Translations under genes and position numbers: made by a program | Part shown: positions 454 to 16,469 of the stretch, piece after piece | How positions within the stretch are numbered: the stretch's first letter is position 1 | How the letters are laid out: each line of letters opens with the position of its first letter | Notes under the pieces: model-generated | What the model was told of the DNA's origin: nothing | What the model saw: the letters and a program-made list of their open reading frames with translations, nothing else | Database searches by the model: none | IMG/VR virus record: IMGVR_UViG_3300035156_000206 | Coordinates: 1 to 64,000 of that record | Length of the DNA stretch: 64,000 nt | Strand: one strand, 5' to 3'

Positions 454-483
454 ATTATACTGACTTTATTTTAGAAAGTCAAC
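454..483 (-). promoter_or_regulatory. sigma70-type early promoter, short form of the repeat
   Basis: minus strand TTGACT-17-TATAAT. Confidence 0.8.
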
Positions 484-488
484 GAGGG

Positions 489-743
489 CTAGTCGACGTA
501 CCTGAGGATGCAGCAGAAGGGGACGCTGATGATGCCCATTTCATTTTCAGGAACCCGGAACTCTGGATCGAGACGAATCATGGCCCAGTCTGCATCACCC
601 GGTTCTTCATCGTACTCCATCAAGAGACGAACAGCAGTTACGGTCCCGATCTGCTCAGGGTAGACTTCCCAGACCTTCTCTGGGTCAATGGGGGTACCAA
701 TGACCACTTTCTTGCCGGTGTCTTGTTGCGTGAGCTTCAGCAT
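489..743 (-). CDS. Hypothetical protein
   Basis: 84-aa ORF overlapping upstream gene, operon-like. Confidence 0.7.
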   Translation of the reverse strand: MLKLTQQDTGKKVVIGTPIDPEKVWEVYPEQIGTVTAVRLLMEYDEEPGDADWAMIRLDPEFRVPENEMGIISVPFCCILRYVD

Positions 744-925
744 GGGATGTGTCCTAACATATCAGCGAGGTCTTGTTTGATTTCGTCCTTGGTCTTGCAC
801 CCTTCATCGCCCTGGAGGTGAGGGATGAATGTCCCCTCATACCAGTCTGAGAAGTCCTGCTTGAACAGCATCTTGTAGATGGCCTCGTCCACGTCGCCAA
901 TATCAAGAGCCACGATAGCTCCCAT
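737..925 (-). CDS. Hypothetical protein
   Basis: 62-aa ORF overlapping neighbours. Confidence 0.6.
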   Translation of the reverse strand: MGAIVALDIGDVDEAIYKMLFKQDFSDWYEGTFIPHLQGDEGCKTKDEIKQDLADMLGHIPC

Positions 926-1325
926 CAGCCACTGCCTTCAAGGCTGCATAGTAAGCTTGGAGGGCACCTGCTTTTGCAGGACGGGTAAAAGAGGAACCAT
1001 CAATCTGGTAGGCTGTGACCACGCCTTCGATGTAGGCTTCTTCATCTTCAGTGCAGCGCTCTTGCACCACAACATTGTCGATGACGAGTGAGCGCTCACT
1101 GGCACAATCGAAGTAGGAGAAGTTGCCGCCTGGAGAAGCGATCACGAACGCCTCGATGTTGTAGACGTCCGATTCGAGACCAACGTACCACAATTCGAGG
1201 TCGCCGTCTTCACCCATCTTGTGGCACTGGTTGTGGCTGTGAATGGACAGGTCAATGTCACCATCGAACTTCATCACGGTGAACAGTGCTGCCAGGTTGG
1301 ATGCTGCTGTGATTGCGTTAATCAT
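903..1325 (-). CDS. Hypothetical protein
   Basis: 140-aa ORF directly downstream of repeat promoter and AAGGAG RBS. Confidence 0.8.
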   Translation of the reverse strand: MINAITAASNLAALFTVMKFDGDIDLSIHSHNQCHKMGEDGDLELWYVGLESDVYNIEAFVIASPGGNFSYFDCASERSLVIDNVVVQERCTEDEEAYIEGVVTAYQIDGSSFTRPAKAGALQAYYAALKAVADGSYRGS

Positions 1326-1336
1326 TTTGTACTCCT

Positions 1337-1383
1337 TCGTCAGTTGATGTAATCATTATACTGACTTTTGGAAGAAAGTCAAC
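1337..1383 (-). promoter_or_regulatory. Conserved early promoter+leader repeat
   Basis: GTTGACT-17-TATAAT GATTACATCAACTGACGAA then GGAG. Confidence 0.9.
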
Positions 1384-1391
1384 TGCAATGC

Positions 1392-1413
1392 AAAAAGGAC
1401 CCGAAGGTCCTTT
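1392..1413 (-). terminator. Rho-independent terminator, UUCG loop
   Basis: AAGGACC-CGAA-GGTCCTT hairpin with A run on the + strand. Confidence 0.85.
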
Positions 1414-1415
1414 GC

Positions 1416-1988
1416 TTAATCGTACAGCGAACGATTGCTTGGTGCTTTAGGCTTTTTGGCTTTGGTCACACCCATCTTGATCAGCCATGCTTCGAAGTCA
1501 ACCAAGGTCATCATGATTGGGCCCAGATTGATGTCATCGTCTTGATGTCCGGTGCCTTCTCTGAACTGGTTGTATGGGAGGCAGTGGCCATCATCCTGCA
1601 ACTGGATAGAGTTCTTCCACTTGATGTATGTGAGCTGGTAGAACTCAGTGGGCTTCAGGCGGCACGACAGTTGCTTGCAGATGTACTTGATGATGTCTTC
1701 ATCAGGGAGAACCACATCCTTGACTGCACCAAGGTTGGCCTTGGCCAGGAATGCATCCAGCTCATCGATCGAGGTGAAGGTCTGGCGCTTCTTGACGTTG
1801 ACAACCTCGACGTTGACAACCTCGACGTTGTATTCCTTCTTGCCCGTCAACCAGTTCTTGTCGATGTCGAGATCAATCAGAAACTGACCCTTTGGAGTCG
1901 AGGCCCGAAACACCTGCATGTCCGGAGCATCGTGATACTTAGCGCGGCGTACCAGATTGTACTTCGCTTTGAGTTCTGTGAGTGTCAT
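1416..1988 (-). CDS. Hypothetical protein
   Basis: 190-aa ORF between repeat promoter and terminator. Confidence 0.85.
   Translation of the reverse strand: MTLTELKAKYNLVRRAKYHDAPDMQVFRASTPKGQFLIDLDIDKNWLTGKKEYNVEVVNVEVVNVKKRQTFTSIDELDAFLAKANLGAVKDVVLPDEDIIKYICKQLSCRLKPTEFYQLTYIKWKNSIQLQDDGHCLPYNQFREGTGHQDDDINLGPIMMTLVDFEAWLIKMGVTKAKKPKAPSNRSLYD
1794..1830. repeat. 15-bp tandem repeat, 2.5 copies, encodes NVEVV-NVEVV
   Basis: GACGTTGACAACCTC x2 plus GACGTTG. Confidence 0.85.
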
Positions 1989-2001
1989 TTGGTTTCTCCA
2001 T

Positions 2002-2049
2002 TTCGTCAGTCGATGTAATCATTATACTGACTTTTGGAAAAATGTCAAC
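2002..2049 (-). promoter_or_regulatory. Conserved early promoter+leader repeat
   Basis: TTGACA-17-TATAAT...GACTGACGAAA. Confidence 0.9.
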
Positions 2050-2051
2050 GG

Positions 2052-2414
2052 TTACAAAATGGGGCCACGTTGTGCATACGAGTAGTTGTTGACCATATCG
2101 GATTCCATCAACTCAACAAGGGACAAGTCCTTGGCGGCGTATCCACAGTACATGTCCGTCACATCCCCTGTGATATCAAACAGGCGACCGTTGATCCTGG
2201 ACAGGATATGACAATTATTGGTCAAGCAGACAGGCTGGGCATCAAAGGCCAATGCCAACATGATGGCAAGGTTGCCGCAATTACCTTTTGAGAATATCTC
2301 GGTGATGATATTCTTGGCGCAATCATCTGGATCAAGACCAGGACACCAACTTGCATCCTGGCTCCGAAGAGCAGATAAGAACAACTGCACCTCGGCTAAA
2401 TTTATCTGTTTCAT
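2052..2414 (-). CDS. Hypothetical protein, possible Cys-His-Asp (papain/transglutaminase-like) fold
   Basis: 120 aa; GNCGNLA...HILSRINGRLFDITG spacing. Confidence 0.7.
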   Translation of the reverse strand: MKQINLAEVQLFLSALRSQDASWCPGLDPDDCAKNIITEIFSKGNCGNLAIMLALAFDAQPVCLTNNCHILSRINGRLFDITGDVTDMYCGYAAKDLSLVELMESDMVNNYSYAQRGPIL

Positions 2415-2426
2415 TCAATCTCCAAA

Positions 2427-2474
2427 TTCGTCAGTCGATGTAATCATTATACTGACTTTTGGAAATTTGTCAAC
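2427..2474 (-). promoter_or_regulatory. Conserved early promoter+leader repeat
   Basis: TTGACA-17-TATAAT...GACTGACGAA. Confidence 0.9.
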
Positions 2475-2476
2475 TG

Positions 2477-2553
2477 TGGTAGGCCGTACTGGACTCGAAC
2501 CAGTGACCAATCCATTATGAGTGAACTGCTCTAACCAACTGAGCTAACGGCCC
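2477..2553 (-). tRNA. tRNA anticodon CAT, Ile2-like (or Met)
   Basis: GGGCCGT/ACGGCCT acceptor, CT-CAT-AA loop, GGTTCGAGTCC T-arm, CCA; body resembles bacterial Ile2. Confidence 0.85.
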
Positions 2554-2563
2554 CACATACAAC

Positions 2564-2585
2564 AAAGGACCCGAAGGTCCTTTTT
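2564..2585 (-). terminator. Terminator hairpin, same as 1392
   Basis: AAAGGACC-CGAA-GGTCCTTTTT. Confidence 0.8.
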
Positions 2586-2586
2586 A

Positions 2587-2841
2587 TTACGCAGTACGCT
2601 TCTGTGCGTACTTACTGCCTTTGTTGCCCTTGCCTTCAGGCGCTTTCGACTTCGGACGCTGGGCATCGCGTTCTGCTGCCAGCGTTTCGGCTTCACGCTT
2701 GATACGCTCCAGGGCACGAACGGTCTTCACCTTGCCGTGGATCGCCTTGGTCTGAGCCGGGCCTTTTTGACCTGCCAGGTGTAGGGCCGTGAACTGCTTG
2801 GCGATGATCTTCTTCTGTACTGCTTTGTTCTGACGAGTCAT
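2587..2841 (-). CDS. Small basic hypothetical protein
   Basis: 84-aa Lys-rich ORF inside tRNA cluster. Confidence 0.75.
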   Translation of the reverse strand: MTRQNKAVQKKIIAKQFTALHLAGQKGPAQTKAIHGKVKTVRALERIKREAETLAAERDAQRPKSKAPEGKGNKGSKYAQKRTA

Positions 2842-2877
2842 GTATCTCTTTCTGACGAGTGGAACTACTAAGGAAAC

Positions 2878-2952
2878 TGGATGCGGGAGGACGAATCGAA
2901 CGTCCGGGGCTTGGCTTATGAGACCTAGTTTGCCACCAACGACATTCCCGCA
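2878..2952 (-). tRNA. tRNA-Met/fMet-like (CAT), atypical
   Basis: TGCGGGA/TCCCGCA acceptor, CT-CAT-AA, TTCGATT T-loop, CCA; mismatch in anticodon stem and weak D-stem. Confidence 0.7.
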
Positions 2953-2960
2953 CTGAAACT

Positions 2961-3036
2961 TGGTGCCCTCAGCAGGATTCGAACCCGCGACCCCCTGATT
3001 ACAAATCAGGTGCTCTACCAGCTGAGCTATAAGGGC
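2961..3036 (-). tRNA. tRNA-Thr (TGT)
   Basis: canonical cloverleaf, TT-TGT-AA loop, CCA. Confidence 0.95.
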
Positions 3037-3052
3037 GAAACTTGTATTACTT

Positions 3053-3129
3053 TGGTGCCACGAGAGGGACTCGAACCCCCAACCTCCGGCTTCGTAGGCC
3101 AGCGCTCTATCCAGTTGAGCTATCGAGGC
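3053..3129 (-). tRNA. tRNA-Arg (ACG)
   Basis: canonical cloverleaf, CT-ACG-AA loop, CCA. Confidence 0.95.
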
Positions 3130-3146
3130 AGACTGCTATTTAGTGC

Positions 3147-3269
3147 TTACCACAACTTAGCAACAAAATGGGTCACAATCCATATCACAGCAATTGCACC
3201 AACAATGGCAGTACCACCCGCAATCACAATCACCATCTCAATTGCAGTAAAGCCGTTTTGCTGATTCAT
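3147..3269 (-). CDS. 40-aa type IV prepilin-like peptide
   Basis: Hand-translated MNQQNG|FTAIEMVIVIAGGTAIVGAIAVIWIVTHFVAKLW; class III signal motif; own promoter at 3302-3330. Confidence 0.75.
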   Translation of the reverse strand: MNQQNGFTAIEMVIVIAGGTAIVGAIAVIWIVTHFVAKLW

Positions 3270-3301
3270 CTTGCTCTCGCTGTTTGTTAACCGATGAAGA
3301 C

Positions 3302-3330
3302 AGTATACGGTGGCTTCATCAGTTAGTCAA
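3302..3330 (-). promoter_or_regulatory. sigma70-type promoter for prepilin-like ORF and tRNA cluster
   Basis: TTGACT-17-TATACT inside an inverted repeat. Confidence 0.75.
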
Positions 3331-3339
3331 CAGTTTTCT

Positions 3340-3609
3340 CTACAGCTTCACCCACTCATTGTAGATCTCTTCTGCCTCTGCCTTGATGGAGGCATCAATG
3401 TCCTCGTCCGTCATATCTGCAGTTCGGTCATCGTCCCAGATGGAGTACAGCTCAGTAGCAATAGTGTTCAAAGCTGTCAGCTTCGCATCCGGATCTTTGA
3501 TGTTGATGGCCAGCTCAGGCATATCACGAAGAGTATCTTCTTCACAGCTCTGGTTGTGAACTGCACCAATCAGTGCAGACTTGAACACGCGGAATGTACT
3601 GTTTGCCAT
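3340..3609 (-). CDS. Hypothetical protein
   Basis: start moved to MANSTF after GAGGAG RBS and repeat promoter. Confidence 0.8.
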   Translation of the reverse strand: MANSTFRVFKSALIGAVHNQSCEEDTLRDMPELAINIKDPDAKLTALNTIATELYSIWDDDRTADMTDEDIDASIKAEAEEIYNEWVKL

Positions 3610-3620
3610 TTCATTCTCCT

Positions 3621-3666
3621 CATCAGTTAATACATTCATTATACTGACTTTTGGAAAAATGTCAAC
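3621..3666 (-). promoter_or_regulatory. Early promoter+leader repeat (variant)
   Basis: TTGACA-17-TATAAT...AACTGATGAGGAG. Confidence 0.85.
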
Positions 3667-4397
3667 TAGGCTTTACGCATCACAAACAGAGTCATCGTCT
3701 TGTCTGGAATCTGTTGCAGTTTGTCCTGCTTCAGTTTCCATTGCTCCATGCCGGCAGGCGTCAGGCCCGAAGGTGCTGTACGAGGCAGGGGACGTGCAGA
3801 CCACAACTTGTCATCTGGCAGGTTGCTACCGTTGTAGACGAACGGTTTGCCATTTGCGTCTGGCATTGGGACACCATCAACAATCACATTGATGACATAG
3901 CCACGTGCACCAGCGGCGAGCTTCTTCCACAACTCAGCACCACCTTGGTATTGGGTGTTGTCGCTGATGATCGTCAAGCCCATCTCAACGAGGGCAACGT
4001 ACAGCATCGCACCGTAGCCACCACGAGCCATCTTCGGATCATTTGCAACGACGAGGTCGACCTGCACCGCACCTGGCAATTTAAGGCCCGGATTGCTGTT
4101 GCTGATCATCTGCTCTTTAAAGTCCAGCGTCACGTAGACGGCTGCACCAGCGACATTGTCTGCAGGACGAGTACCGCGCTTACCAATGAATGCTCCGCTG
4201 TGGTCTTGGCGAATGTAGACGACGTAGTTCGGGTCGTCCTTCACCAGCTTGAATTCATCGGCCAAGGTCCGATCGCTAAAGAAGTGATCGAAGCTGCTGG
4301 TATCCATTTGGAGCTTTTTTGGTTTGCCATCGGCATCTTCAGGGGCGTATGGCATCTCTTTGAGCAGGTTCTCGTTAAGTATTTGGTCTAATCGCAT
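3666..4397 (-). CDS. Late protein with GNAT-like motif A and N-terminal ILNE, possible internal head protein
   Basis: 243 aa; MRLDQILNE; ARGGYGAMLY; TAAATA at 4420-4425. Confidence 0.7.
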   Translation of the reverse strand: MRLDQILNENLLKEMPYAPEDADGKPKKLQMDTSSFDHFFSDRTLADEFKLVKDDPNYVVYIRQDHSGAFIGKRGTRPADNVAGAAVYVTLDFKEQMISNSNPGLKLPGAVQVDLVVANDPKMARGGYGAMLYVALVEMGLTIISDNTQYQGGAELWKKLAAGARGYVINVIVDGVPMPDANGKPFVYNGSNLPDDKLWSARPLPRTAPSGLTPAGMEQWKLKQDKLQQIPDKTMTLFVMRKA

Positions 4398-4418
4398 TTG
4401 GGTTCCTTTGTTATGGGC

Positions 4419-4718
4419 TTATTTAGCCTCGAACTGAGACAAGAACTCCAGGCAGTCCTTCAAGCCATCACGGCCGACGAACACAATATGATCTTGATCT
4501 TCGGGGCCATAGACAACGAGGATGTTGCATTCGTCCATGTCGAGGCTCTGGCGACCATTACGATCCCCGTACACCCAGTGGCGACCATAGGCACCTGCTT
4601 TGGTGTTGATGAGCTCTTTGATCTCGTCATCATCGTATACCTTGTCCTGCGAGCCATGCGTGACGGCACCGAACACTTTAACCTCAGACAATGGAGGTGG
4701 GCTGTAGATGGTAATCAT
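4419..4718 (-). CDS. Hypothetical protein
   Basis: start moved to MITIYS after repeat leader. Confidence 0.75.
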   Translation of the reverse strand: MITIYSPPPLSEVKVFGAVTHGSQDKVYDDDEIKELINTKAGAYGRHWVYGDRNGRQSLDMDECNILVVYGPEDQDHIVFVGRDGLKDCLEFLSQFEAK

Positions 4719-4727
4719 TGAATGCCT

Positions 4728-4776
4728 TTCGTCAGTTGATATTCCTATTATACTGACTTTCTTACAAAAAGTCAAC
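4728..4776 (-). promoter_or_regulatory. Conserved early promoter+leader repeat
   Basis: TTGACT-17-TATAAT...AACTGACGAAAGG. Confidence 0.9.
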
Positions 4777-4793
4777 TGACGTAGGCTTAAAAG

Positions 4794-5087
4794 TTATGTC
4801 GCATCCGATGTGCGTCTTTGTGGCATTCTTGAGACCAGTTCTTCGAACCAGCCTGGGACGCGCTTGTAGTTGATGTACGCGGCAATGTGCTTGGGATAAA
4901 CTTGCTCCAGCTTTGCCAGGTCATCTGCATCAGCAATCCAGATCAACTCCCAGAGGGCGTTGTTGAATTTGTCTGCTGTGCCGTAGTGCTTGCATTTGAT
5001 TAGGGATAACTCTCCCTCGTCCAGATCGATGTCTGGCTTAGCATCCTCAGGACGCTGCTCTTCCTTAGGATCACCAATAATGTACAT
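4794..5087 (-). CDS. Hypothetical protein
   Basis: 97-aa ORF; GGAGG RBS; TTGACA-17-TATAGT promoter near 5120-5148. Confidence 0.8.
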   Translation of the reverse strand: MYIIGDPKEEQRPEDAKPDIDLDEGELSLIKCKHYGTADKFNNALWELIWIADADDLAKLEQVYPKHIAAYINYKRVPGWFEELVSRMPQRRTSDAT

Positions 5088-5166
5088 CTTGATACCTCCG
5101 TTGTGAGTGTCAGTAAGTCACTATACTGTGTTACGGAGGAAATGTCAACGATCACATCGCAAAAGG

Positions 5167-5186
5167 AAAAGGACCCGAAGGTCCTT
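5167..5186 (-). terminator. Terminator hairpin, same as 1392
   Basis: AAGGACC-CGAA-GGTCCTT with A run. Confidence 0.8.
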
Positions 5187-5191
5187 GTCTC

Positions 5192-5368
5192 TCAATCCAT
5201 TTCAGACTGAGTCAGTTTATCGATTGCTTGGTTGTAGCTTCGGCGCATCGCACGCATGAAAGCTTTGCGTCCTTTACGGCCGCTTGGTGCACAGCATGAG
5301 CAGTGCAAACCTCCACCACCGAGCTTGGCATGGCAGGTTTTGAGAAAGTGTTTCTTTTCGCGAATCAT
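5192..5368 (-). CDS. Small basic CxCC protein
   Basis: start moved to MIREKK after GGAG RBS; GGGGLHCSCC motif. Confidence 0.65.
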   Translation of the reverse strand: MIREKKHFLKTCHAKLGGGGLHCSCCAPSGRKGRKAFMRAMRRSYNQAIDKLTQSEMD

Positions 5369-5629: not shown

Positions 5630-5719
5630 TGGCGGAAACGGTGGGATTCGAACCCACGGGCCCTGTTACGGGCCGCCGGTTTAGCAAACCGGTGCCTTAA
5701 GCCTCTCAGCCACATTTCC
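5630..5719 (-). tRNA. tRNA-Ser (GCT)
   Basis: class II cloverleaf, TT-GCT-AA, long variable arm, CCA. Confidence 0.95.
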
Positions 5720-5736
5720 GAACAACTATTTATTCG

Positions 5737-5827
5737 TGGCGGAAGCGGTGGGATTCGAACCCACGGAGCCCTTTCGGACTCGGCAGTTTTCAAGACTGCT
5801 GCCTTAAACCAGCTCGGCCACGCTTCC
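5737..5827 (-). tRNA. tRNA-Ser (TGA)
   Basis: class II cloverleaf, CT-TGA-AA, CCA. Confidence 0.95.
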
Positions 5828-6862: not shown

Positions 6863-6933
6863 TATATCCCCTCGTCAGCTATTTTGATCAACGCTTAGTT
6901 GATAAGGCTATTATACTGAAATTTGGAAATTAA

Positions 6934-7620
6934 TCAACTCTTTTTTGTAAGATTGTGGTAATAGGTAGACGCACCAGCTTCTGTCAATCCTGCATCACGA
7001 ACTAGCTTCTTGATGACTGTCTTGCGGCTGCGGTCTTTGTTGCGCTTGATGATCCAGATGGCTTTGTCCTTCTTGGTACCAAATGCAATCTTCTCAGGCA
7101 TAGAGGTAGGAACATGGACTGGCTCCGAAGGAACGAGTCTGGTTTTGCAAGCAACACATTGGTACTTGTCCAACATGATCTTGCGGCGCATGATGCTGGC
7201 GTAGACGTGACTATCGTCGTTGCAAGCACAAAGGAACTTGTAGGTGGTGAACTGACGTTTGCTGATGTTCGTATCCAACCCATGACACCGATCAGGCTTC
7301 AGCCCCATCAGGATCATAATTGCCTTCCATTCCTTACCATGCGCTTGGGTATCATGTCCGTGAATGTGCTCTGTGATGACGTGAGCAACCTCATGAGGTA
7401 CAATTTGGTATAGGAACGCAGAAGGGTACGCACTCAGCAATATGGGATCGAAATTGACATGGTAGTGGATACCACGAGCCCAGCCAGCAGTCGTGTAGCT
7501 ACGCTGGTAGGTGATGATAAGAGGAGGAAGGTTTAAATCAGGATACACTGCCTCCACGCGTGCGATTGAGTCGAGGACGACAGCACGAACTTGGTTGTGG
7601 AGGTCAGGAGGGATGTTCAT
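6934..7620 (-). CDS. SprT-like zinc metalloprotease with Cys cluster and C-terminal repeat-family domain
   Basis: HEVAH (HExxH), HGKEWK, CxC...CxxC; C-terminal GLTEAGASTYYHN. Confidence 0.85.
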   Translation of the reverse strand: MNIPPDLHNQVRAVVLDSIARVEAVYPDLNLPPLIITYQRSYTTAGWARGIHYHVNFDPILLSAYPSAFLYQIVPHEVAHVITEHIHGHDTQAHGKEWKAIMILMGLKPDRCHGLDTNISKRQFTTYKFLCACNDDSHVYASIMRRKIMLDKYQCVACKTRLVPSEPVHVPTSMPEKIAFGTKKDKAIWIIKRNKDRSRKTVIKKLVRDAGLTEAGASTYYHNLTKKS

Positions 7621-8645: not shown

Positions 8646-8661
8646 GCACTACTCCTTAAAA

Positions 8662-9059
8662 TGGGTCCCCCTTTCGATGACAGGGACTAGTGAACCTTTC
8701 GGCTCAGTAGCGGGGGATTATTTCAACCCTGCAAAGTTAGTTAGGCGTAAGCCGCTACTTTGAATTGTGAGTCGTTTGCATTTACATGCTTGCATCTTTT
8801 CGCCTTACGGCCGAGGATCGCTTCTCGTGTTGTCAACCTACGGTTATCTCACCACGTCGAAACCAGGTCGCCCCCATCAGCTGCACTTTCAGGTCTATGT
8901 CTGGTGTACCAGTCCTGAGAATTGATGTTATCTCATCTTCGAAAGCGCAGTTGGTGGAGGCGGCGGGAATCGAACCCGCGTCCGCAATGCCTTCACTTTG
9001 GCATCTGGATAGGTCTTACCCTACCCCACAACAATGTATCCGTTGATTTCTCAACTGAT
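8662..9059 (-). ncRNA. ssrA: Circularly permuted (two-piece) tmRNA
   Basis: acceptor piece ending GGTTCGATTCCCGCCGCCTCCACCA at 8952 is transcribed before GGGGGCGACCTGGTTTCGAC at 8875; tag ANDSQFKVAAYA at 8741-8779; outer ends approximate. Confidence 0.9.
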
Positions 9060-9065
9060 GAAGCC

Positions 9066-9094
9066 ATTATATAGACTTCTTCAGTTGAAGTCAA
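9066..9094 (-). promoter_or_regulatory. sigma70-type promoter of the tmRNA/ncRNA operon
   Basis: TTGACT-17-TATAAT inside inverted repeat. Confidence 0.8.
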
Positions 9095-9103
9095 CAGTTA
9101 ATT

Positions 9104-9439
9104 TCACAAGAGCTGATCAGCCAGCTTGACCAACTCGGCACGGTCCAGTTCAAACTCCGGACGCAGACGCTCCTGTTTCGACGATTGTGCCTCAGGCCAG
9201 TATGCCAGCTCATGAGGAGTCTTCATGGTCGAATGGTGAATCCCAGCCAAGCGGTTCCACTTCAACTCGGTTGGATGGAAGACCGAGATGATCGCATGCG
9301 ACTGGAAGTCATACGAGTCGCTCTTGATCGAGATGGACAACTTGTGCCCCTTCATTTCGAAAACTTGATGCAGCGTCAATGACTGACGCGCTTTAAGAAT
9401 TTCGTCCTGAATCATTTTGATCTTGGATGCTTTTGCCAT
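9104..9439 (-). CDS. Hypothetical protein
   Basis: 111 aa; downstream of repeat promoter, AAGGAG. Confidence 0.8.
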   Translation of the reverse strand: MAKASKIKMIQDEILKARQSLTLHQVFEMKGHKLSISIKSDSYDFQSHAIISVFHPTELKWNRLAGIHHSTMKTPHELAYWPEAQSSKQERLRPEFELDRAELVKLADQLL

Positions 9440-9455: not shown

Positions 9456-9503
9456 TTCGTCAGTTGATATAGCTTATTATACTGACTTTTGGAAAAATGT
9501 CAA
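9456..9503 (-). promoter_or_regulatory. Conserved early promoter+leader repeat
   Basis: TTGACA-17-TATAAT...AACTGACGAAA. Confidence 0.9.
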
Positions 9504-9955
9504 CTGGCTTTCCAAGGGTTAGCTTTGGGAATCACTTCGCCATTCTTGACCTTGTAGAACTCGCTACCTTCCTGGCGGTACAGTGGACTGACCTTGGCGT
9601 CAGCTATTTCAGCATTCGCTAAATCGTCCCAGAGAGCTTCCAGGTGCTCGTAGTAGTTCTTCCGGTGATGCTTGCGGTACAGCCGGTTGACGTCTTCCAT
9701 CGTGAAGCCGTGCTTCCGCATGTACGGACCCAACTGGTCAATTGGGTCGCCACCGTCGCAGGCGTAGCCGAGGGCATTATCGGCAGCCTGATAGAGAGCC
9801 TGCAACTTCAGGTCATTGATGGCCTTGCGTTCAGCAGCGGTCTGCCTCTTAGGCGCATCATAGCTTTCGCGCCACGCTTCCACTCCCGATTGGTTCAGGT
9901 TGCGGAAGCGTTTGTAGGTGCCCGATTTATTTGGGACTTGAACGGATGAGCTCAT
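9500..9955 (-). CDS. Hypothetical protein
   Basis: start moved to MSSSVQ, ATGA overlap with upstream stop. Confidence 0.75.
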   Translation of the reverse strand: MSSSVQVPNKSGTYKRFRNLNQSGVEAWRESYDAPKRQTAAERKAINDLKLQALYQAADNALGYACDGGDPIDQLGPYMRKHGFTMEDVNRLYRKHHRKNYYEHLEALWDDLANAEIADAKVSPLYRQEGSEFYKVKNGEVIPKANPWKAS

Positions 9956-10715: not shown

Positions 10716-10821
10716 GATGACTTCTCCTTCGTCGTTGGATTCAATATAGACAATTATACTCACTTTTGGAAAAATGTCAACAGTTGCTTTCCAAATAAAT
10801 AAAGCATCATAGGAGCACACA

Positions 10822-11073: not shown

Positions 11074-11606
11074 TGGACTGTGGTGTTCGGCGGCACTGAA
11101 GCTTCTGGCTCACCATTCTCGGCCCGCTCCTGAGCCGCCCGTCCGGCCATCATCAATGATACGATGGCTGCGACGAGTGGATGCTGCTCGCGCTCCTCTT
11201 CATCATCGTCACCATGAACCATTTGGCAACCAGGGCACCAGCCTTCAGGCTTGTCTTCATCGCCGGCCTTGGTTTTGATCTCGGCCTTCTTGCGAGCCAC
11301 GAATTCGTCAACAGCACCCTTCGTGATGATCTTGTGCTCTTCCAGGATCACGAGCATCTCGCCCATGACTTCGGACACGCCAGCAATCAAGCCAAGTGGC
11401 ATCGCAATTTGTGCGTGCCCGATTTGGTTCATGGTAAGGCCAGGTGGCGCCTGTTCCAGGATGTGTTCCATCGCATCAGCAAACTTCTCATGCAACGCAG
11501 CGGCCCCGGCCGCAACATGCAAGATGCGTTCTTCTTTTGACATACCAGCGAGGAACTCCTCGTGGTCCTTTTTCTGCTCAGCTTGCTTCTCTTTGGTCGT
11601 TGCCAT
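11070..11606 (-). CDS. Hypothetical protein
   Basis: 178 aa; GACGAAAGGG leader; promoter near 11637-11664. Confidence 0.8.
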   Translation of the reverse strand: MATTKEKQAEQKKDHEEFLAGMSKEERILHVAAGAAALHEKFADAMEHILEQAPPGLTMNQIGHAQIAMPLGLIAGVSEVMGEMLVILEEHKIITKGAVDEFVARKKAEIKTKAGDEDKPEGWCPGCQMVHGDDDEEEREQHPLVAAIVSLMMAGRAAQERAENGEPEASVPPNTTVH

Positions 11607-11737
11607 TTTATTCCCTTTCGTCTAAGTGATGTGTTCATTATAGACAGAATTTGTGTAAAGTCAACAGTAATATTGAGATAGCATTATTAAGCAAAAGCTA
11701 TTATAATGAGGGAACTATACAACTTCGGGAGTTTCCC

Positions 11738-11992
11738 ATGTCGCATGCTCTAGTGACCCTCATTGATGAGGTTTTGAAAGACGCTGAGGTTCATGATGTT
11801 GAGGTGTCAATCCAAGTCGACACCGGATCGAAGACGATGGGTGCATCTTATAAGGACGATGTTGGGATGTGCCGCTACTACGTCAATGATATCGATGCCC
11901 TGTGGTATGAGATCCAGAAGGAACTGGAAGGCGAACAAACCTCAATGATCGACGCTTTTTGGTCAATCTTGAATACCGTATATAAGATTTAA
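11738..11992 (+). CDS. Hypothetical protein
   Basis: start moved to MSHALV after GGGAG. Confidence 0.7.
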   Translation: MSHALVTLIDEVLKDAEVHDVEVSIQVDTGSKTMGASYKDDVGMCRYYVNDIDALWYEIQKELEGEQTSMIDAFWSILNTVYKI

Positions 11993-12130
11993 ATGAAAAA
12001 CCATTGAGAAATCTCAAGGGCCTTAGCAGATTACCGTTGATTTCTGATATTTCCACCGTATGATTAAGTTATCAACTCTACCGCACTCAATAGTGGGAGC
12101 GGGGAAGTTACTAACCCAAGGAGAATCAAG

Positions 12131-12463
12131 ATGGCAACCTCGAATCGTAATCACGGCTCTAAAGCACCATTGGTCCCTGAGCCACAGCACACCGGCCGCA
12201 ACGCGGAATCGTTCTCGACGCAGCAAGGCAGCAACAAAGCAGCCATTGCCCGCAAAATCTTTAACGAGATCGGTACCGACCAGCCACGCAAGGCCGTCAT
12301 CGAGCGCTTCCAGTCCGAAGCACACCTGACCCCTGCAGGCGCGGCAACCTACTACCAGAACATGAAAAAAGAAGCCGGCCTCGTCGCAGTTGGCGGCCCA
12401 GGCAACACACGCGCGCAAAACAATGCGCCGGCTGAAGGCGGCGCAGCAACGGCCAAGAAATAA
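12131..12463 (+). CDS. Small basic protein, repeat-family domain
   Basis: 110 aa; LTPAGAATYYQN motif; AAGGAG RBS; terminator follows. Confidence 0.8.
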   Translation: MATSNRNHGSKAPLVPEPQHTGRNAESFSTQQGSNKAAIARKIFNEIGTDQPRKAVIERFQSEAHLTPAGAATYYQNMKKEAGLVAVGGPGNTRAQNNAPAEGGAATAKK

Positions 12464-12509
12464 TTCACTTACCGGTGATTATCTGGCCCCCTTTATGGTG
12501 GCCATGTTT

Positions 12510-12536
12510 GGGGAGACTTCGGTCTCCCCCTTTTTT
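12510..12536 (+). terminator. Rho-independent terminator
   Basis: GGGGAGAC-TTCG-GTCTCCCC then T6. Confidence 0.9.
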
Positions 12537-12545
12537 ATCCCTACT

Positions 12546-12593
12546 GTTGACTTTCTTCCAAATGTCAGTATAATGAAATCATCGACTGACGAA
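12546..12593 (+). promoter_or_regulatory. Conserved early promoter+leader repeat, plus-strand copy
   Basis: TTGACT-17-TATAAT GAAATCATCGACTGACGAAAGGGAG. Confidence 0.9.
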
Positions 12594-12606
12594 AGGGAGA
12601 TACAAA

Positions 12607-12972
12607 ATGAAATTTAGTGACCTCACAAGCGATGTTGCACGGGTAGATTATCTGAAGGCTCAGCTGACCCAGGATGACCGGTTGATCATGCGTTGCCTAT
12701 TGGCAATCTACAATAACCAGACCTTGGATGAACAAAGCTCCAAGACTGTTAACAAGCACAATGGCATCGGCTTTAAGTCGATGGATGCGAAGATCCTCAC
12801 GGAGTATGTACAGACGGCAGAGCGTCGTCGTGTGACTGAGGCTCTGGAGAACAAGAATGTTGAATTCTGCTTGGAGCGTGTACTGTCCGAGAAGCAGGCA
12901 GCATTCCTGCGCCGTGCAATGCCAAAGTATGCCCGTCAACTTTTGAAGGTAATCAAGGAGAAACAAAAATGA
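12607..12972 (+). CDS. Conserved phage hypothetical protein
   Basis: 121 aa; LLAIYNNQT.DEQ...HNGIGF pattern. Confidence 0.8.
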   Translation: MKFSDLTSDVARVDYLKAQLTQDDRLIMRCLLAIYNNQTLDEQSSKTVNKHNGIGFKSMDAKILTEYVQTAERRRVTEALENKNVEFCLERVLSEKQAAFLRRAMPKYARQLLKVIKEKQK

Positions 12973-13250
12973 ACATCACTACCCAGGTAAGTCGTTTGGA
13001 TTCCAAATCTCGCAAAGTTGGTGGCGAGATGCAGCAAAGCACTGCCCACACCATCCAGGTTGATGGCAAAACCTTCCTTCATGGAGGACCTAAGGTAATT
13101 GTGACTGAGTACCCGAATGGGAAGACGACGATCACGGCCACCGAAGCATATGGTCGCATCTACTTGGTAGATGGGAAGGTACATCAATTTGCCTCCGTAC
13201 AAGCAGCAGCAGAAGCGCTGGTTGCAAAGGAGCTGAAACAAACTCCTTGA
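12969..13250 (+). CDS. Hypothetical protein
   Basis: 93 aa; ATGA overlap; AAGGAG. Confidence 0.75.
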   Translation: MNITTQVSRLDSKSRKVGGEMQQSTAHTIQVDGKTFLHGGPKVIVTEYPNGKTTITATEAYGRIYLVDGKVHQFASVQAAAEALVAKELKQTP

Positions 13251-13293
13251 TCTTCAGGACCTACCTCCTCTACAATGCTCCACTTAGTTCCAT

Positions 13294-13301
13294 TATAAAT
13301 A
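13294..13301 (+). promoter_or_regulatory. T4-like late promoter
   Basis: exact TATAAATA ahead of a gene-free hairpin-rich stretch. Confidence 0.6.
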
Positions 13302-13719
13302 TGGGACTACAGTGGATGTTTGTTTTTCGGGCATTATGTTTCCACTATAAAAACATAAAGAACGACGGGCCTTGGAGTAGAGCCCAATAACTACTAACCA
13401 GGTGGGGGATGTGCGAGCGACCCAATCCAACCGCTGTCGTAGCGGCGATTACAAACAGAAATGGGCAGACGGTTTATACATGATTTAGTTCATGCCGGCG
13501 TGACGGTCTCGACGATACAGAGACATGCTGATAAAACACCTTACGACCAAGATTGATCACTTCCAATCTTGAACTAGTTCTTTAGGACAGATTCCTTCTT
13601 CCAGGTTGAATTAATTTAAATTATTCCTTCCTGTTTTTGAAAAGCTCTGACCGGGTCCTAGGCTCATGTCCTGTACCCCTACGGGTTGACAAAAACCTAA
13701 GACTTCAGTATGATGCAAA

Positions 13720-14085
13720 TCAATCCTCCATGTCCTTCCATACCCCGAACTCCACTACCGAGATAGGTTGGCCGTACTCAGTCGCCGATTTGTGCCAGTG
13801 CTCGATCAGACTAACAGGCACATCAGGATATGCAGCCACTACCTGCTCAATAATCAAACTATCAAACAAGTCCTGACGCATCTGGGTCAGATACAGATTG
13901 GCCGTATCCAGAGCCAATGCCTCATCGTCAAATGCCTCACAGGTGTAACCCTTGGCCTGACCGAATGTGCTGGAGGACGACACACGATATGTGGTCCCAG
14001 CTGCACCCTCATACTTCGTGCAAGTAACATGCATCACGGTGTCACCAAACACGTGACTAAATTGCAACAGGGTTGTGGTTTTCAT
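13720..14085 (-). CDS. Hypothetical protein
   Basis: 121 aa; repeat promoter, AAGGAG. Confidence 0.8.
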   Translation of the reverse strand: MKTTTLLQFSHVFGDTVMHVTCTKYEGAAGTTYRVSSSSTFGQAKGYTCEAFDDEALALDTANLYLTQMRQDLFDSLIIEQVVAAYPDVPVSLIEHWHKSATEYGQPISVVEFGVWKDMED

Positions 14086-14095
14086 CTTTTACTCC

Positions 14096-14143
14096 TTCGT
14101 CAGTTGATGTAGTCATTATACTGACTTTTGGAAATTTGTCAAC
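14096..14143 (-). promoter_or_regulatory. Conserved early promoter+leader repeat
   Basis: TTGACA-17-TATAAT...AACTGACGAAGGAG. Confidence 0.9.
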
Positions 14144-14153
14144 GGGATGGGAA

Positions 14154-14336
14154 TTAGACGTTGTCCGCAGGACCAATGATCTGGAAGCCACCTTCAGATA
14201 CCTCAAACTCACATTCGCCATCTGTCAGGTCATCCGAGTAGCTAATGTAGTTGACCACGGAGTCCAACTCCTCATCCGTGCAACCATCCAACAACGCCTT
14301 CAGCTCACGCAGGGTCTTGAAAGTTCCTTCAGCCAT
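14154..14336 (-). CDS. Small acidic hypothetical protein
   Basis: 60 aa; repeat promoter, GGAG. Confidence 0.7.
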   Translation of the reverse strand: MAEGTFKTLRELKALLDGCTDEELDSVVNYISYSDDLTDGECEFEVSEGGFQIIGPADNV

Positions 14337-14347
14337 GATATTCTCCA

Positions 14348-14391
14348 GTAGTTGATGTAGTCATTATACTGACTTTTGGAAATTTGTCAAC
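14348..14391 (-). promoter_or_regulatory. Early promoter repeat (variant leader)
   Basis: TTGACA-17-TATAAT GACTACATCAAC. Confidence 0.85.
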
Positions 14392-14509
14392 GGGAACAAA
14401 TACCAAACGATTTAAACGCGTTATACGCGATTTGTTTTACAATCGGTAAGCAAATGCGATCGACGAAGGAAAACCGTGCAAACGTTGATCTGAACGGTTT
14501 CCGATGTGT

Positions 14510-14785
14510 TTACGTGAGGAGGACAGATAGCGGATCGATGGTCTCGATGTTCAGCTTTGTGAACACGCGTTCCATGAGCTCATCGGTGAGGTCTGGTTGA
14601 TCGGCTCCCCACATGCGGTACACTGTCCAGAAGCGGCCATTGCTTTCTTTCAGGCCGTTGATCAGCCACTCGCAGATCTGGTGCATCAAGTAGCGAGCTT
14701 CTGGTGTGTACTCTGGTGCACCGATCAGTCCGGTCTGGACATCACGGAACACCGCAATCACGTCGTCCTTGCAAGTGGCGATCAT
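14510..14785 (-). CDS. Hypothetical protein
   Basis: 91 aa; ATGA overlap. Confidence 0.75.
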   Translation of the reverse strand: MIATCKDDVIAVFRDVQTGLIGAPEYTPEARYLMHQICEWLINGLKESNGRFWTVYRMWGADQPDLTDELMERVFTKLNIETIDPLSVLLT

Positions 14786-15342
14786 GCTGTTGCCTTATCG
14801 TCTGGGTTGACGTATACTTGCATCAGCAGTTCCCGCGGTTGCATCTTGACCTTTGGGAACAGGGCATTGTGTCCCATGTTGACCACGACCGGCTTGCCAC
14901 AGTGTTCGCCACCAGCAACCACGACGCCGCTTTCGCCAGTATCAATTGTCTTCACGACCATGCCGGCCCACATTGGGAACCGAGGCGGAAGCCACTTGAC
15001 AATATCGGCGGTCCATTCGAACATCTGCAGTGCGGTGATCTTGCCCGCATCATGTGCGTGGAAGTAGTACTCGGCCAGCTCTGGAATGGTGACGCACTCA
15101 TCGACGCCCATGCCATAGTAGCCCATGCCGTACAAGGCATTCAGCCGTTCCGTAACCGATGTGGTCTGGAGGAAGATGTAGGCATCGATTACGTGGAACA
15201 GCTTCTCGTCCGAAAAGAAGTTGCCACGCCACGGCAGACCTTTGATTTGGTCCGAATTGGTGATCACGAGCTCGCCGATTGCATCCAGGCGACGTCGCAT
15301 CTCAGCAGCATTGCCGGTCAGTAGTATGGTCTTGTCAGTCAT
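14782..15342 (-). CDS. Hypothetical protein
   Basis: 186 aa; repeat promoter, GGAG. Confidence 0.8.
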   Translation of the reverse strand: MTDKTILLTGNAAEMRRRLDAIGELVITNSDQIKGLPWRGNFFSDEKLFHVIDAYIFLQTTSVTERLNALYGMGYYGMGVDECVTIPELAEYYFHAHDAGKITALQMFEWTADIVKWLPPRFPMWAGMVVKTIDTGESGVVVAGGEHCGKPVVVNMGHNALFPKVKMQPRELLMQVYVNPDDKATA

Positions 15343-15355
15343 TTTGTATCTCCGT

Positions 15356-15403
15356 TTCGTCAGTTGATGTAATCATTATACTGCTTTTTCCAAAATAGTC
15401 AAC
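15356..15403 (-). promoter_or_regulatory. Conserved early promoter+leader repeat, back-to-back with a + promoter
   Basis: TTGACT-17-TATAAT; shared palindrome GTCAACTGTTGAC. Confidence 0.9.
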
Positions 15404-15433
15404 TGTTGACTTTTCTGAGAATCCAAGTATAAT

Positions 15434-15518
15434 AGACTTACCGTGACCATAGGAGAGGGGAGGTATGGCGATACGGTTCGCAACGGGACACAACAAAAGA
15501 GGACCGAAGTCCTCTTTT
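15434..15518 (+). ncRNA. Three-copy small RNA/peptide cassette, copy A
   Basis: TTGACT-16-TATAAT then AGACTTACCG-N7-AGGAGAG-N4-GGTATGGCGATACGGTTC; terminator 15495-15518. Confidence 0.6.
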
Positions 15519-15520
15519 GG

Positions 15521-15859
15521 TTAGCGGATGATCAGGACCTTCAGGATTGGCTGGTTGCAATATTCTGCAGGCGAATCCAAATCGACCTCCTGGTCTTCGT
15601 CATCCATTGCACCGCGCAGGGCACGTTCAGCTTCTTCGACCTTCTCTTCATCCAGGGTCTGGAACTTCTCTGCGTTCGAGCACCATGCAACTGACTCGAC
15701 CGTAATCTGACCAATCTCCTCAGCCACTTCCGTCCGCCAGTAATCGCCCAGGGGCCGAGCAAAGTGAATTGGATTAGCCAACTCGTCTGGGTCCATTTGG
15801 GCCAACAGATCCATTAGTTGCTTACCGGTGATGGAACCACTTTCGCTGTGACGTGCCAT
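15521..15859 (-). CDS. Hypothetical acidic protein
   Basis: 112 aa; repeat promoter near 15893-15921, AGGAG. Confidence 0.8.
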   Translation of the reverse strand: MARHSESGSITGKQLMDLLAQMDPDELANPIHFARPLGDYWRTEVAEEIGQITVESVAWCSNAEKFQTLDEEKVEEAERALRGAMDDEDQEVDLDSPAEYCNQPILKVLIIR

Positions 15860-15925
15860 TTTAGTTCTCCTGTTTGTTTAGTCAATATAATCATTATACT
15901 GACTTTTGGAAAAATGTCAACGCTG

Positions 15926-16411
15926 TTACTCTGCGTTCCACGAACTGGTTGGCAGACCCACAAATTCGATTTCGTCGCCAATGCGCATATAGCGTTGGAT
16001 GTGGTATTGGTTCATCATGTGATCAAACCACAGGCAGGTGTTGGTACCAACATCAATACCAACAACTTCAAATTCACGGCTGGCGCCGGCCGAGCGTTGC
16101 AGGAAGTAGTCAAGGTGGTCGAATGACTCCACCCGGCCGAGGTCGTACACATGGTCCCCCTGAGCTTCCAGGGCACAGAAGGTCAGCAGTGGTACAGCAT
16201 CATTCTCGCAGCGGATGACCCCGTGCCAATCCTGAGACAACTCAACCGCGCTGATGCCCCATTCACAACCTGGCACATCATGCCAAAGAATTTGGTTCGT
16301 TTCCTGCTTCACGGCAATAGGTTCCATGCCCGTATAACCAGCAGCTTCGAATGCCTGACCTATCATGGCACAGGTCATTTCCTTTTCTACTTCCAGGCGC
16401 TTGAGTTTCAT
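15926..16411 (-). CDS. Hypothetical protein
   Basis: start moved to MKLKRL after repeat leader. Confidence 0.8.
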   Translation of the reverse strand: MKLKRLEVEKEMTCAMIGQAFEAAGYTGMEPIAVKQETNQILWHDVPGCEWGISAVELSQDWHGVIRCENDAVPLLTFCALEAQGDHVYDLGRVESFDHLDYFLQRSAGASREFEVVGIDVGTNTCLWFDHMMNQYHIQRYMRIGDEIEFVGLPTSSWNAE

Positions 16412-16421
16412 TTTATTCCCT

Positions 16422-16469
16422 TTCGTCAGTTGATGCAATCATTATACTGATTTTTCCAAAATTGTCAAC
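16422..16469 (-). promoter_or_regulatory. Conserved early promoter+leader repeat, back-to-back with a + promoter
   Basis: TTGACA-17-TATAAT...AACTGACGAAAGGG. Confidence 0.9.

What the first reader, a model, noticed from the sequence alone, without database searches (positions are those of the whole stretch)
454..16469. Promoter-cassette array: one ~47-bp promoter+leader repeat in front of many small early genes
Seen: near-identical GTTGACA/T-N17-TATAAT-GATTACATCAACTGACGAA at 1337, 2002, 2427, 3621, 4728, 9456, 12546(+), 14096, 14348, 15356, about 15880 and 16422, plus shorter or distant versions (454, 10753, 19618, 41721). Conservation extends through the spacer and 20 nt past the -10, beyond what sigma70 needs. 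Established: T4-type phages use repeated promoter elements (PeSL) to shuffle gene cassettes. Inference: this repeat defines both a regulon and recombination units.
Basis: partly seen in the sequence, partly recalled or inferred. Interest (0 to 1): 0.6.

Follow-up and report, generated by a model that had tools for sequence, protein, structure and literature searches.

The report
Repeated early promoter-leader cassettes in jumbo phage
A giant uncultured phage puts nearly the same 48-base strong promoter plus short mRNA leader in front of a dozen unrelated small genes; comparison with relatives shows genes being added, lost and swapped at these repeats, as already described for T4-type phages.

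Summary
Twelve near-identical 48-49 nt copies lie at 1.3-16.5 kb: a perfect -35, a conserved 16-nt spacer, a perfect -10 and a conserved leader. Eleven are on the minus strand. About eight weaker copies also exist. Each copy sits 9-17 nt upstream of a ribosome-binding site and start codon. Pairwise identity is 0.89 in the promoter and 0.67 in the leader, against 0.25 in both flanks. The genes behind the copies are unrelated ORFans.

The window is the first 64 kb of a 292-kb uncultured jumbo myovirus. Its terminase is 48% identical to those of Xanthomonas phages Xoo-sp13 and XacN1.

A metagenomic relative (L026) carries the same repeat family at 92-96% identity, while the syntenic DNA around it is only 67-79% identical. 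So the spacer and leader are under selection. The gene backbone is conserved, but 9 of 19 L026 genes have no homolog here. Insertions, deletions and swaps end within 0-4 bp of repeat edges or at the start codon behind a repeat.

This behaves like the known PeSL cassettes of T4-type phages. It differs in that most copies lack the stem-loop terminator, and there is an extra CTGACGAA box tied to the translation start. Transcription timing and the recombination mechanism were not tested. I rate it a new member of a known kind, of moderate interest.

The parts
1336..1383 (-). core repeat copy, drives 140-aa ORFan 903-1325; UUCG-loop stem-loop just upstream
2002..2049 (-). core repeat copy, drives 190-aa ORF 1416-1988
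2427..2474 (-). core repeat copy, drives YunG-like 120-aa gene 2052-2414; tRNA-Met ends 3 nt upstream
3619..3666 (-). core repeat copy (leader variant CTGATGA), drives 89-aa ORF and probably the tRNA cluster 2477-3129
4728..4776 (-). copy with 17-nt spacer of different centre but same TGACTTT/AAAGTCA ends and full leader box
9456..9504 (-). core promoter, leader box shifted by 1 nt, drives 111-aa ORF 9104-9439
12546..12593 (+). the only plus-strand core copy, terminator hairpin 12510-12529 just upstream; positional counterpart in L026 at 1406
14096..14143 (-). core copy, drives 121-aa ORFan; cassette absent from L026
14344..14391 (-). core copy with truncated leader; shares a 46-nt exact tract with copy 14143, 248 bp away; homology to L026 stops 4 bp upstream of it
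15356..15403 (-). core copy (GG spacer variant), back to back with plus-strand promoter 15405; the gene behind it (186-aa ORFan) is replaced by an unrelated 112-aa gene in L026
15874..15921 (-). core promoter with diverged leader; homology to L026 breaks 1 bp upstream; L026 has an extra 94-aa gene behind its counterpart
16422..16469 (-). core copy (GG spacer variant), back to back with plus-strand promoter 16471
435..483 (-). weaker copy: same palindromic spacer ends, no leader box
6878..6938 (-). weaker copy; leader box split by about 20 nt, CTGACGA part stays next to the ribosome-binding site
10734..10781 (-). weaker copy: core promoter, degenerate leader
17699..17832 (-). two tandem related promoters (17746, 17832) with other leaders; orthologous pair in L026 (7384, 7471); site of an 860-bp cassette present only in L026
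19599..19646 (-). distant copy, drives 149-aa gene conserved in L028 and L030
41722..41776 (-). outlying promoter with the leader box 19 nt from the -10 but 11 nt from the start codon

Best explanation
The repeat is a composite expression signal, and a plastic block of small genes of unknown function in an uncultured jumbo myovirus is built from it.

Part 1 is a maximal host sigma-70-type promoter: G-TTGACA, a 16-nt spacer made of a T-tract, CC, an A-tract and GTCAG, then TATAAT. I infer that host RNA polymerase uses it straight after infection.

Part 2 starts at about +1. It is a short 5' leader, AUCAACUGACGAA, followed by GGAG and the start codon. Its CTGACGAA box keeps a fixed distance to the start codon even when its distance to the -10 changes. 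It therefore most likely acts on the mRNA at the translation start, either as a uniform strong initiation region or as the site of a post-transcriptional regulator.

Selection keeps both parts close to one consensus across related phage genomes.

Because the same 29-46 nt exact tracts recur every 0.25-2.5 kb in one orientation, they also serve as joints. At these joints, promoter-plus-gene cassettes are inserted, deleted and exchanged by the phage's homologous recombination system. This is what PeSL elements do in T4-type phages.

Shown: the repeat, its position relative to genes, cross-genome conservation, and cassette differences ending at repeats.
Inferred: use by sigma-70, early timing, action of the box at RNA level, and a causal role of the repeats in recombination.
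For: - **Promoter quality and excess.** 20 hits against 0.22 expected. Twelve hexamer pairs are perfect 12/12.
- **Link to genes.** Every copy faces an ORF with a ribosome-binding site 55-66 nt downstream.
- **Edges.** Identity falls from 0.89 to about 0.25 at both ends.
- **Genes behind the copies.** They are not paralogs. They have almost no family matches. One has no homolog among 5.8 billion proteins.
- **Leader box position.** The distance from box to start codon is 9-17 nt (sd 2.3). The distance from -10 to box is 10-31 nt (sd 6.6). Ten of 468 genes have the box within 30 nt upstream, against 0.7 expected.
- **Conservation in a relative.** L026 carries the same family. Copies are 92-96% identical across genomes, while syntenic DNA is 67-79% identical. 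Core copies are closer to non-orthologous copies (2-5 differences) than to their positional orthologs (7-15 differences).
- **Cassette differences at repeats.**
  - Homology ends 4 bp from copy 14391 and 1 bp from copy 15921.
  - An 860-bp promoter-plus-gene cassette present only in L026 is bounded by -35 edges.
  - The genes behind 15403 are swapped, and an extra gene follows the counterpart of 15921.
  - L028 has a 590-bp extra segment ending 4 bp from promoter 20068.
  - L030 has 0.9 kb where this phage has 6.2 kb.
- **Recent duplication.** A 46-nt exact tract flanks a 248-bp cassette.
- **Recombinase.** A RecA/UvsX-type gene is present in the genome.
- **Precedent.** PMC2839356 and PMC4122927.
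Against: - No transcript or 5'-end data exist.
- The relatives available are fairly distant (shared proteins 33-76% identical). Many events separate them, and breakpoints can only be placed where similarity is detectable.
- Intergenic space here is nearly all promoter. Any whole-gene replacement would therefore end near a promoter, with or without a role for the repeat.
- Similarity between copies does not fall with distance (Mantel r -0.17, p 0.95). Selection alone would also produce this.
- Exact tracts of 29-46 nt are short substrates for recombination.
- No homolog of T4 RegA, RegB or AsiA was found, so no partner for the leader box or for promoter shut-off is identified.
- The host is unknown.
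Confidence: 0.62

Rival explanations
1. The copies are only strong promoters kept alike by selection for maximal expression. Gene turnover in the region comes from ordinary illegitimate recombination and gene decay. The repeats play no part in it and merely occupy the intergenic space where breakpoints must fall.
For: The consensus is conserved across genomes. Similarity does not fall with distance. The gap from a gene's stop codon to the next -35 is only 2-32 nt, so breakpoints between genes are forced to lie near promoters. Several same-size gene replacements could be divergence beyond recognition.
Against: A 46-nt exact tract extends 4 nt beyond the -35 and flanks a 248-bp cassette. One cassette, including its own repeat, is present in one genome and absent in the other, with both ends at -35 edges. 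At 14391 the repeat is present together with a foreign gene where L026 has neither. About 50 other consensus promoters in the same genome use other spacers, so promoter strength alone does not demand this spacer.
Confidence: 0.25
2. The extra conservation marks a DNA operator. A phage-encoded DNA-binding protein binds the spacer (TGACTTT-N6/7-AAAGTCA) and/or the +5 to +13 box, and switches the whole set off or on together. One candidate is a member of the six-copy homeodomain-like family encoded in the same region.
For: The palindromic ends are kept in copies 483 and 4776 although the spacer centre differs. The spacer is 0.89 identical although sigma-70 does not need it. A paralog family with a three-helix, homeodomain-like domain lies in the array, and one member carries an N-terminal winged helix.
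Against: The GTCA half-site is broken in related copies (GTGAG in L026 8332 and window 10781; TACAG in L030). The GG-variant copies 15403 and 16469 also lose it. The box follows the start codon rather than the -10. The fold match is not significant (E 0.7-1.7).
Confidence: 0.25
3. The repeat spread recently by copy-and-paste, and its spacer and leader are neutral hitch-hikers.
For: The edges are sharp and the flanks unrelated. Some neighbouring copies share private variants.
Against: The same consensus holds at 92-96% identity in L026, whose syntenic DNA is 67-79% identical. A recognisable but drifted version exists in the 39%-GC relative L030. Variation is concentrated at a few positions, while the blocks CCAAAAGTCAG and ATCAACTGACGAA stay fixed.
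Confidence: 0.07

Closest known systems
PeSL (promoter-early stem-loop) cassettes of T4-type phages (Arbiol et al. 2010, PMC2839356; Comeau et al. 2014, PMC4122927)
   Same: Near-consensus sigma-70 promoter, ribosome-binding site and start codon recur between small ORFan genes in a hyperplastic region. Insertions, deletions and replacements between related phages end at the elements. The repeats are direct and 0.25-2.5 kb apart.
   Different: Only 3 of the 21 promoters tested have the stem-loop terminator that defines a PeSL, and terminators are not enriched. Conservation here covers the spacer and a 13-nt leader box, not an upstream AT-rich region. The phage is a distant, XacN1-related jumbo lineage. 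The comparison genomes are far more diverged than the PeSL pairs. Mini-circles were not tested.
Host-takeover module of Bacillus phage SPO1, and early-promoter clusters of T5 and T4 (from my own knowledge, not tested here)
   Same: Many small early genes, each with its own very strong host-type promoter and strong ribosome-binding site, packed with little intergenic space. T5 early promoters also share sequence in the initially transcribed region.
   Different: Those promoters share a consensus but are not near-identical over 48 nt. No SD-linked box like CTGACGAA is described for them, to my knowledge.
Conserved TTGAC/TATAATA promoters of jumbo phage PA5oct (PMC7318152)
   Same: A jumbo myovirus that relies on host RNA polymerase, with about 30 highly conserved sigma-70-like promoters at mapped transcription start sites.
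   Different: The paper reports -35 and -10 motifs only. It reports no extended repeat and no role in gene shuffling.

Membership tests
PeSL | strong sigma-70-like early promoter (-35, about 17 nt, -10) | tested here: met
   Perfect or 11/12 hexamers with a 16-17 nt spacer in all copies. Use by RNA polymerase was not measured.
PeSL | stem-loop terminator immediately upstream of the -35 | tested here: not met
   Clear GC-rich hairpin plus T-run at only 3 of 21 promoters (1383, 5149, 12546). Others have a 2-32 nt gap to the previous stop codon. Terminator-like sites: 21 found against 17.6 expected.
PeSL | Shine-Dalgarno and start codon of the downstream gene at the 3' end of the element | tested here: met
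   GGAG-type site and ATG 55-66 nt from the -35 in every core copy.
PeSL | clustered in hyperplastic, ORFan-rich regions | tested here: met
   Core copies occur only at 1.3-16.5 kb. Downstream genes lack family matches or homologs. Nine of 19 genes of the syntenic contig L026 have no homolog here.
PeSL | indels and replacements between related phages end at the elements | tested here: met
   Breakpoints lie 0-4 bp from repeat edges or at the start codon behind a repeat, at 14391, 15403, 15921, 17832 and 20068. The relatives are distant, so this is weaker than in the original papers.
PeSL | recombination between neighbouring elements gives mini-circles | not testable with these tools
   Needs outward PCR or raw reads.
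T4-type phage (genome context of PeSLs) | T4-like core genes and T4 early-gene regulators | tested here: inconclusive
   T4-type large terminase, sheath and RecA/UvsX-like genes are present. The best cultured match is only 48% identical (XacN1 group). RegA, RegB and AsiA were not found in the 84%-complete record.

The most novel reading that the evidence does not exclude
The 48-nt repeat is the address label of a dedicated phage control circuit. An unknown phage-encoded factor, possibly one of the homeodomain-like paralogs encoded inside the array, recognises the conserved spacer. A second factor recognises the SD-linked CTGACGAA box on the mRNA. The whole takeover gene set is then switched together at both transcription and translation. 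The same label also lets new genes plug into the circuit by recombination, in a jumbo-phage lineage outside the T4 subfamily and without the PeSL terminator.
Probability: 0.2. Interest if true: 0.6.

Novelty: new member of a known kind. Interest (0 to 1): 0.4.

Why it matters
- It extends promoter-bounded gene shuffling, so far documented in T4-subfamily phages, to a distant uncultured jumbo-phage lineage. It also shows that the stem-loop terminator is not needed for the pattern.
- It gives a clean natural experiment: one promoter-plus-leader sequence held at 92-96% identity across genomes whose other DNA has drifted to about 70%. That points to functional positions in the spacer and 5' leader that current sigma-70 promoter models do not explain.
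- The repeat marks a set of about 20 unknown small genes as a probable host-takeover or anti-defence toolbox.
- It provides a compact, very strong expression signal that could be tested as a synthetic-biology part.

Tried and rejected
**Searches for the repeat elsewhere**
- Exact-pattern scans in IMG/VR contigs found nothing.
- Scans of 185,579 species genomes found nothing.
- The JGI metagenome scan gave 5 hits. All are chance matches: GC 27-44% and no promoter arrays.

**Routes to relatives that failed or gave little**
- No close relative is in the GenBank phage set.
- Terminase-based searches of viral contigs found none.
- The long relatives found through the terminase, including the 306,727-bp ENA contig (L014) and the Logan contig carrying the closest long-contig terminase (L013), are not held for whole-record search. 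Only short syntenic contigs could be used.
- P0133's contig had no DNA available, and P0127's contig is only 952 bp.

**Reads**
No read-level test for circles, deletions or transcripts was made, and read laying was not used.

**Hypotheses rejected**
- An RNA hairpin GUCAGU/ACUGAC across the -10. There are no compensatory changes, and the pairing is broken in several copies.
- A strict TGAC...GTCA operator. It is not conserved in relatives.
- Tandem duplication of gene plus promoter. The downstream genes are not paralogs.
- Local-only spread. Similarity shows no decay with distance.

**Other negative results**
- T4 RegA, RegB and AsiA were not found.
- Rfam gives nothing for the small plus-strand units, and they share no RNA structure.
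- The fold search for the paralog domain gave only non-significant homeodomain matches.
Full report
**1. What the window is**

The window is the first 64 kb of a 291,967-bp IMG/VR virus record. The record is linear, and CheckV estimates it at 84% complete. GC content is about 50%. The record encodes a T4-type large terminase, a tail sheath and an adaptor protein. The best cultured terminase matches are Xanthomonas phages Xoo-sp13 and XacN1, at 48-49% identity. It is therefore an uncultured jumbo myovirus only distantly related to T4. Closer relatives exist only in metagenomes, with terminase identity of 70-86%.

**2. Checking the observation**

- GTTGAC-N17-TATAAT with at most one mismatch gives 20 hits in the window, against 0.22 expected.
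- A weight matrix built from ten copies scores the family at 43-78 bits. The best score in shuffled sequence is 0.8 bits.
- The consensus is GTTGACATTTTTCCAAAAGTCAGTATAATGATTACATCAACTGACGAA. It is followed after 0-8 nt by GGAG and after a further 6-9 nt by ATG.

Among 11 core copies, mean pairwise identity is as follows:

| Segment | Identity |
|---|---|
| 60 nt upstream of the -35 | 0.24-0.27 |
| -35 through -10 | 0.89 |
| Next 19 nt | 0.67 |
| Next 14 nt | 0.35 |
| Further downstream | 0.26-0.27 |

The whole genome has about 64 near-consensus sigma-70-type promoters. They cluster on the minus strand at 0-20 kb and at 227-292 kb. Most of them have other spacers. The near-identical family is confined to 1.3-16.5 kb, with weaker members at 483, 6938, 10781, 11665, 17746, 17832, 19646 and 41776, and three more at the far end of the record.

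**3. Anatomy**

- Each copy faces an open reading frame whose start codon lies 55-66 nt from the -35.
- The genes behind the copies are 60-190 aa and are unrelated to one another (all-against-all blastp). They almost never match a family. The only exception is a YunG-like protein at 2052-2414.
- The 186-aa gene behind copy 15403 has no homolog among 5.8 billion proteins in the word-indexed search. A later tblastn comparison found one partial match in L030, 41% identical over 66 aa.
- The gap between a stop codon and the next -35 is 2-32 nt. Intrinsic terminators are not enriched (21 against 17.6 expected). Only three of the 21 promoters folded (1383, 5149, 12546) have a clear GC-rich hairpin plus T-run just upstream.
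- tRNA genes and a permuted tmRNA lie inside the array.
- Several minus-strand copies are back to back with plus-strand promoters, through a GTCAAC-N-GTTGAC palindrome.

**4. The repeat is two fused elements**

The block from -35 to -10 is a promoter. The second block begins about 7 nt after the -10, which is roughly where transcription should start.

- The heptamer CTGACGA occurs 71 times in the genome, against 36 expected. Fourteen of these lie directly upstream of a ribosome-binding site.
- In promoters 6938, 41776 and 278280 the box lies 19-31 nt from the -10 instead of 10-12 nt, yet it stays 9-11 nt from the start codon.
- Overall, the box-to-start distance has sd 2.3, while the -10-to-box distance has sd 6.6.
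- Ten of 468 genes have the box within 30 nt upstream, against 0.7 expected.

I therefore read the box as part of the translation start region of the mRNA. Whether it enhances initiation or binds a regulator cannot be decided here. No homolog of T4 RegA, RegB or AsiA was found.

**5. Relatives**

Pattern scans for the repeat found nothing in viral contigs or in species genomes. The metagenome scan gave only chance hits.

Relatives were reached another way. A six-member paralog family lies in the region. A profile search with it gave proteins 76-77% identical to two window genes, and their contigs were fetched.

**L026 (8.9 kb, JGI)** is syntenic with window 11.2-18.3 kb. It carries the same family: copies at 1406(+), 4765(-) and 8332(-), plus variants at 443, 3947, 6058 and 6070.

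- Family copies are 92-96% identical between the two genomes, while the syntenic blocks are 67-79% identical.
- Core copies are closer to non-orthologous copies (2-5 differences in 48) than to their positional orthologs (7-15 differences). The two non-family promoters, 17746 and 17832, are closest to their orthologs.
- So the family is held at one consensus in both genomes. This argues for selection on the spacer and leader, and against neutral hitch-hiking.

**L030**, a more distant relative with 39% GC, has a recognisable but drifted version of the repeat.

**6. Gene content at the repeats**

Backbone order is conserved between L026 and the window, but 9 of 19 L026 genes have no homolog anywhere in the 292-kb record. 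The differences are as follows.

- **Copy 14391.** Homology ends 4 bp upstream of the copy. L026 has no promoter there and a different gene follows. The window has two cassettes with copies 14143 and 14391.
- **Copy 15921.** Homology breaks 1 bp upstream and resumes at the -35 of plus-strand promoter 16930. Between them L026 has 1.8 kb and the window has 1.0 kb.
- **Copy 15403 and its counterpart L026 3947.** The promoters correspond, but the genes behind them (186 aa against 112 aa) are unrelated.
- **L026 4765, the counterpart of 15921.** An extra 94-aa gene follows the L026 copy.
- **Promoter 17832.** An 860-bp unit is present only in L026. It consists of family copy 8332, a 190-aa gene and a 79-aa frame. 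Both of its ends lie at -35 edges.
- **L028.** It has 590 extra bp ending 4 bp from promoter 20068.
- **L030.** It has 0.9 kb between two genes that are 6.2 kb apart here.
- **L021.** The YunG-like gene is translationally coupled to an upstream gene and has no repeat in front of it.
- **Within the window.** Copies 14143 and 14391 share a 46-nt exact tract that reaches 4 nt beyond the -35 and brackets a 248-bp cassette. Other pairs share exact tracts of 29-39 nt.
- A RecA/UvsX-type gene is present in the genome.

**7. Interpretation**

The pattern matches what Arbiol et al. (PMC2839356) and Comeau et al. (PMC4122927) described for PeSLs. In those phages, near-consensus promoters with a ribosome-binding site and start codon recur in ORFan-rich hyperplastic regions and bound indels and replacements. 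Crossovers were mapped between the -10 and the ATG. The truncated leader of copy 14391 and the diverged leader of copy 15921 look like such junctions.

The defining stem-loop terminator is missing from most copies, so I do not file the element as a PeSL in the strict sense. It works like one.

Caveats:
- The relatives are distant.
- Intergenic DNA here is nearly all promoter, so gene-level replacements must end near promoters in any case.
- Similarity between copies shows no decay with distance, which is what selection alone would also give.
- No expression or read-level evidence could be obtained.

**8. Why the spacer is conserved**

This remains open. A palindrome TGACTTT-N6/7-AAAGTCA is kept in copies 483 and 4776, whose spacer centres differ. 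But the GTCA half is broken in several related copies. What persists is the T-tract, CC or GG, A-tract and AG before the -10.

The paralog family in the region has a three-helix domain. The model has pLDDT 80, and its best fold matches are homeodomains, but without significance (E 0.7-1.7). It is a lead for a DNA-binding partner and nothing more.

**9. Verdict**

- The reading as a promoter-plus-leader cassette array is supported by sequence and by comparison with relatives.
- The regulon and the recombination mechanism remain inferences.
- This is a new member of a known kind of system, with two features worth testing: selection on the spacer, and the start-codon-linked leader box.

Noticed in passing
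window 8650-9044 (-), promoter at about 9066-9095: A phage-borne permuted (two-piece) tmRNA gene: Rfam RF04321 at 108 bits, ARAGORN tag ANDSQFKVAAYA. It has its own consensus promoter. Permuted tmRNAs are typical of alpha- and some beta-proteobacteria and of cyanobacteria, which may hint at the host.
   Followed up: partly
window 2477-3129 and 5630-5827 (-): Six tRNA genes (Met, Met, Thr, Arg; Ser-GCT, Ser-TGA) are embedded in the array. They appear to be fed by repeat copy 3666 and by promoter 6027.
   Followed up: no
window 15405-15520, 16930-17040, 17844-17960 (+); L026 3986, 6558, 8346 (+); L021 1841 (-): Tiny plus-strand units of about 80 nt. Each has a strong promoter, a conserved leader AGACTTACCG, a strong ribosome-binding site, a micro-ORF starting MGIRF, and usually a terminator hairpin. 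They are antisense to the minus-strand genes and conserved in relatives. They share no RNA structure and have no Rfam match.
   Followed up: partly
window 6934-7317, 12131-12463, 17392-17658, 18709-18942; G000 274286-275143, 280214-280711: A six-member paralog family shares a C-terminal domain of about 50 aa, predicted as a three-helix, homeodomain-like bundle. It has 2284 representative clusters in metagenomes and no Pfam family. It is fused to SprT-like or winged-helix domains in some members.
   Followed up: partly
window 1-165, 18461-18536, 20878, 21584; L021 960-1110: Clusters of GGGGTCGGG repeats (C-rich on the transcribed strand) lie downstream of small genes in the array. The contig starts inside one cluster. 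The record's 3' end is a (GGCGTT)n tandem repeat, so both contig ends are probably assembly breaks at repeats.
   Followed up: no
window about 1392-1411, 2564-2583, 5169-5186 (-): Three copies of a GGACC-TTCG-GGTCC hairpin followed by a T-run. These are the only PeSL-like terminators in the array.
   Followed up: partly
window 14400-14440; L026 3150-3200; L021 1126-1156: A conserved AAACGCGTTTAAATCG-type motif lies in intergenic DNA upstream of copy 14391 and is shared with two relatives. Its function is unknown.
   Followed up: no
window 22000-24000: There is a strong GC skew (0.40) over two 315-322-aa plus-strand frames next to a collagen-like tail-fibre gene (24325-25428). That gene has a 76%-identical paralog at G000 106076-107263.
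   Followed up: no
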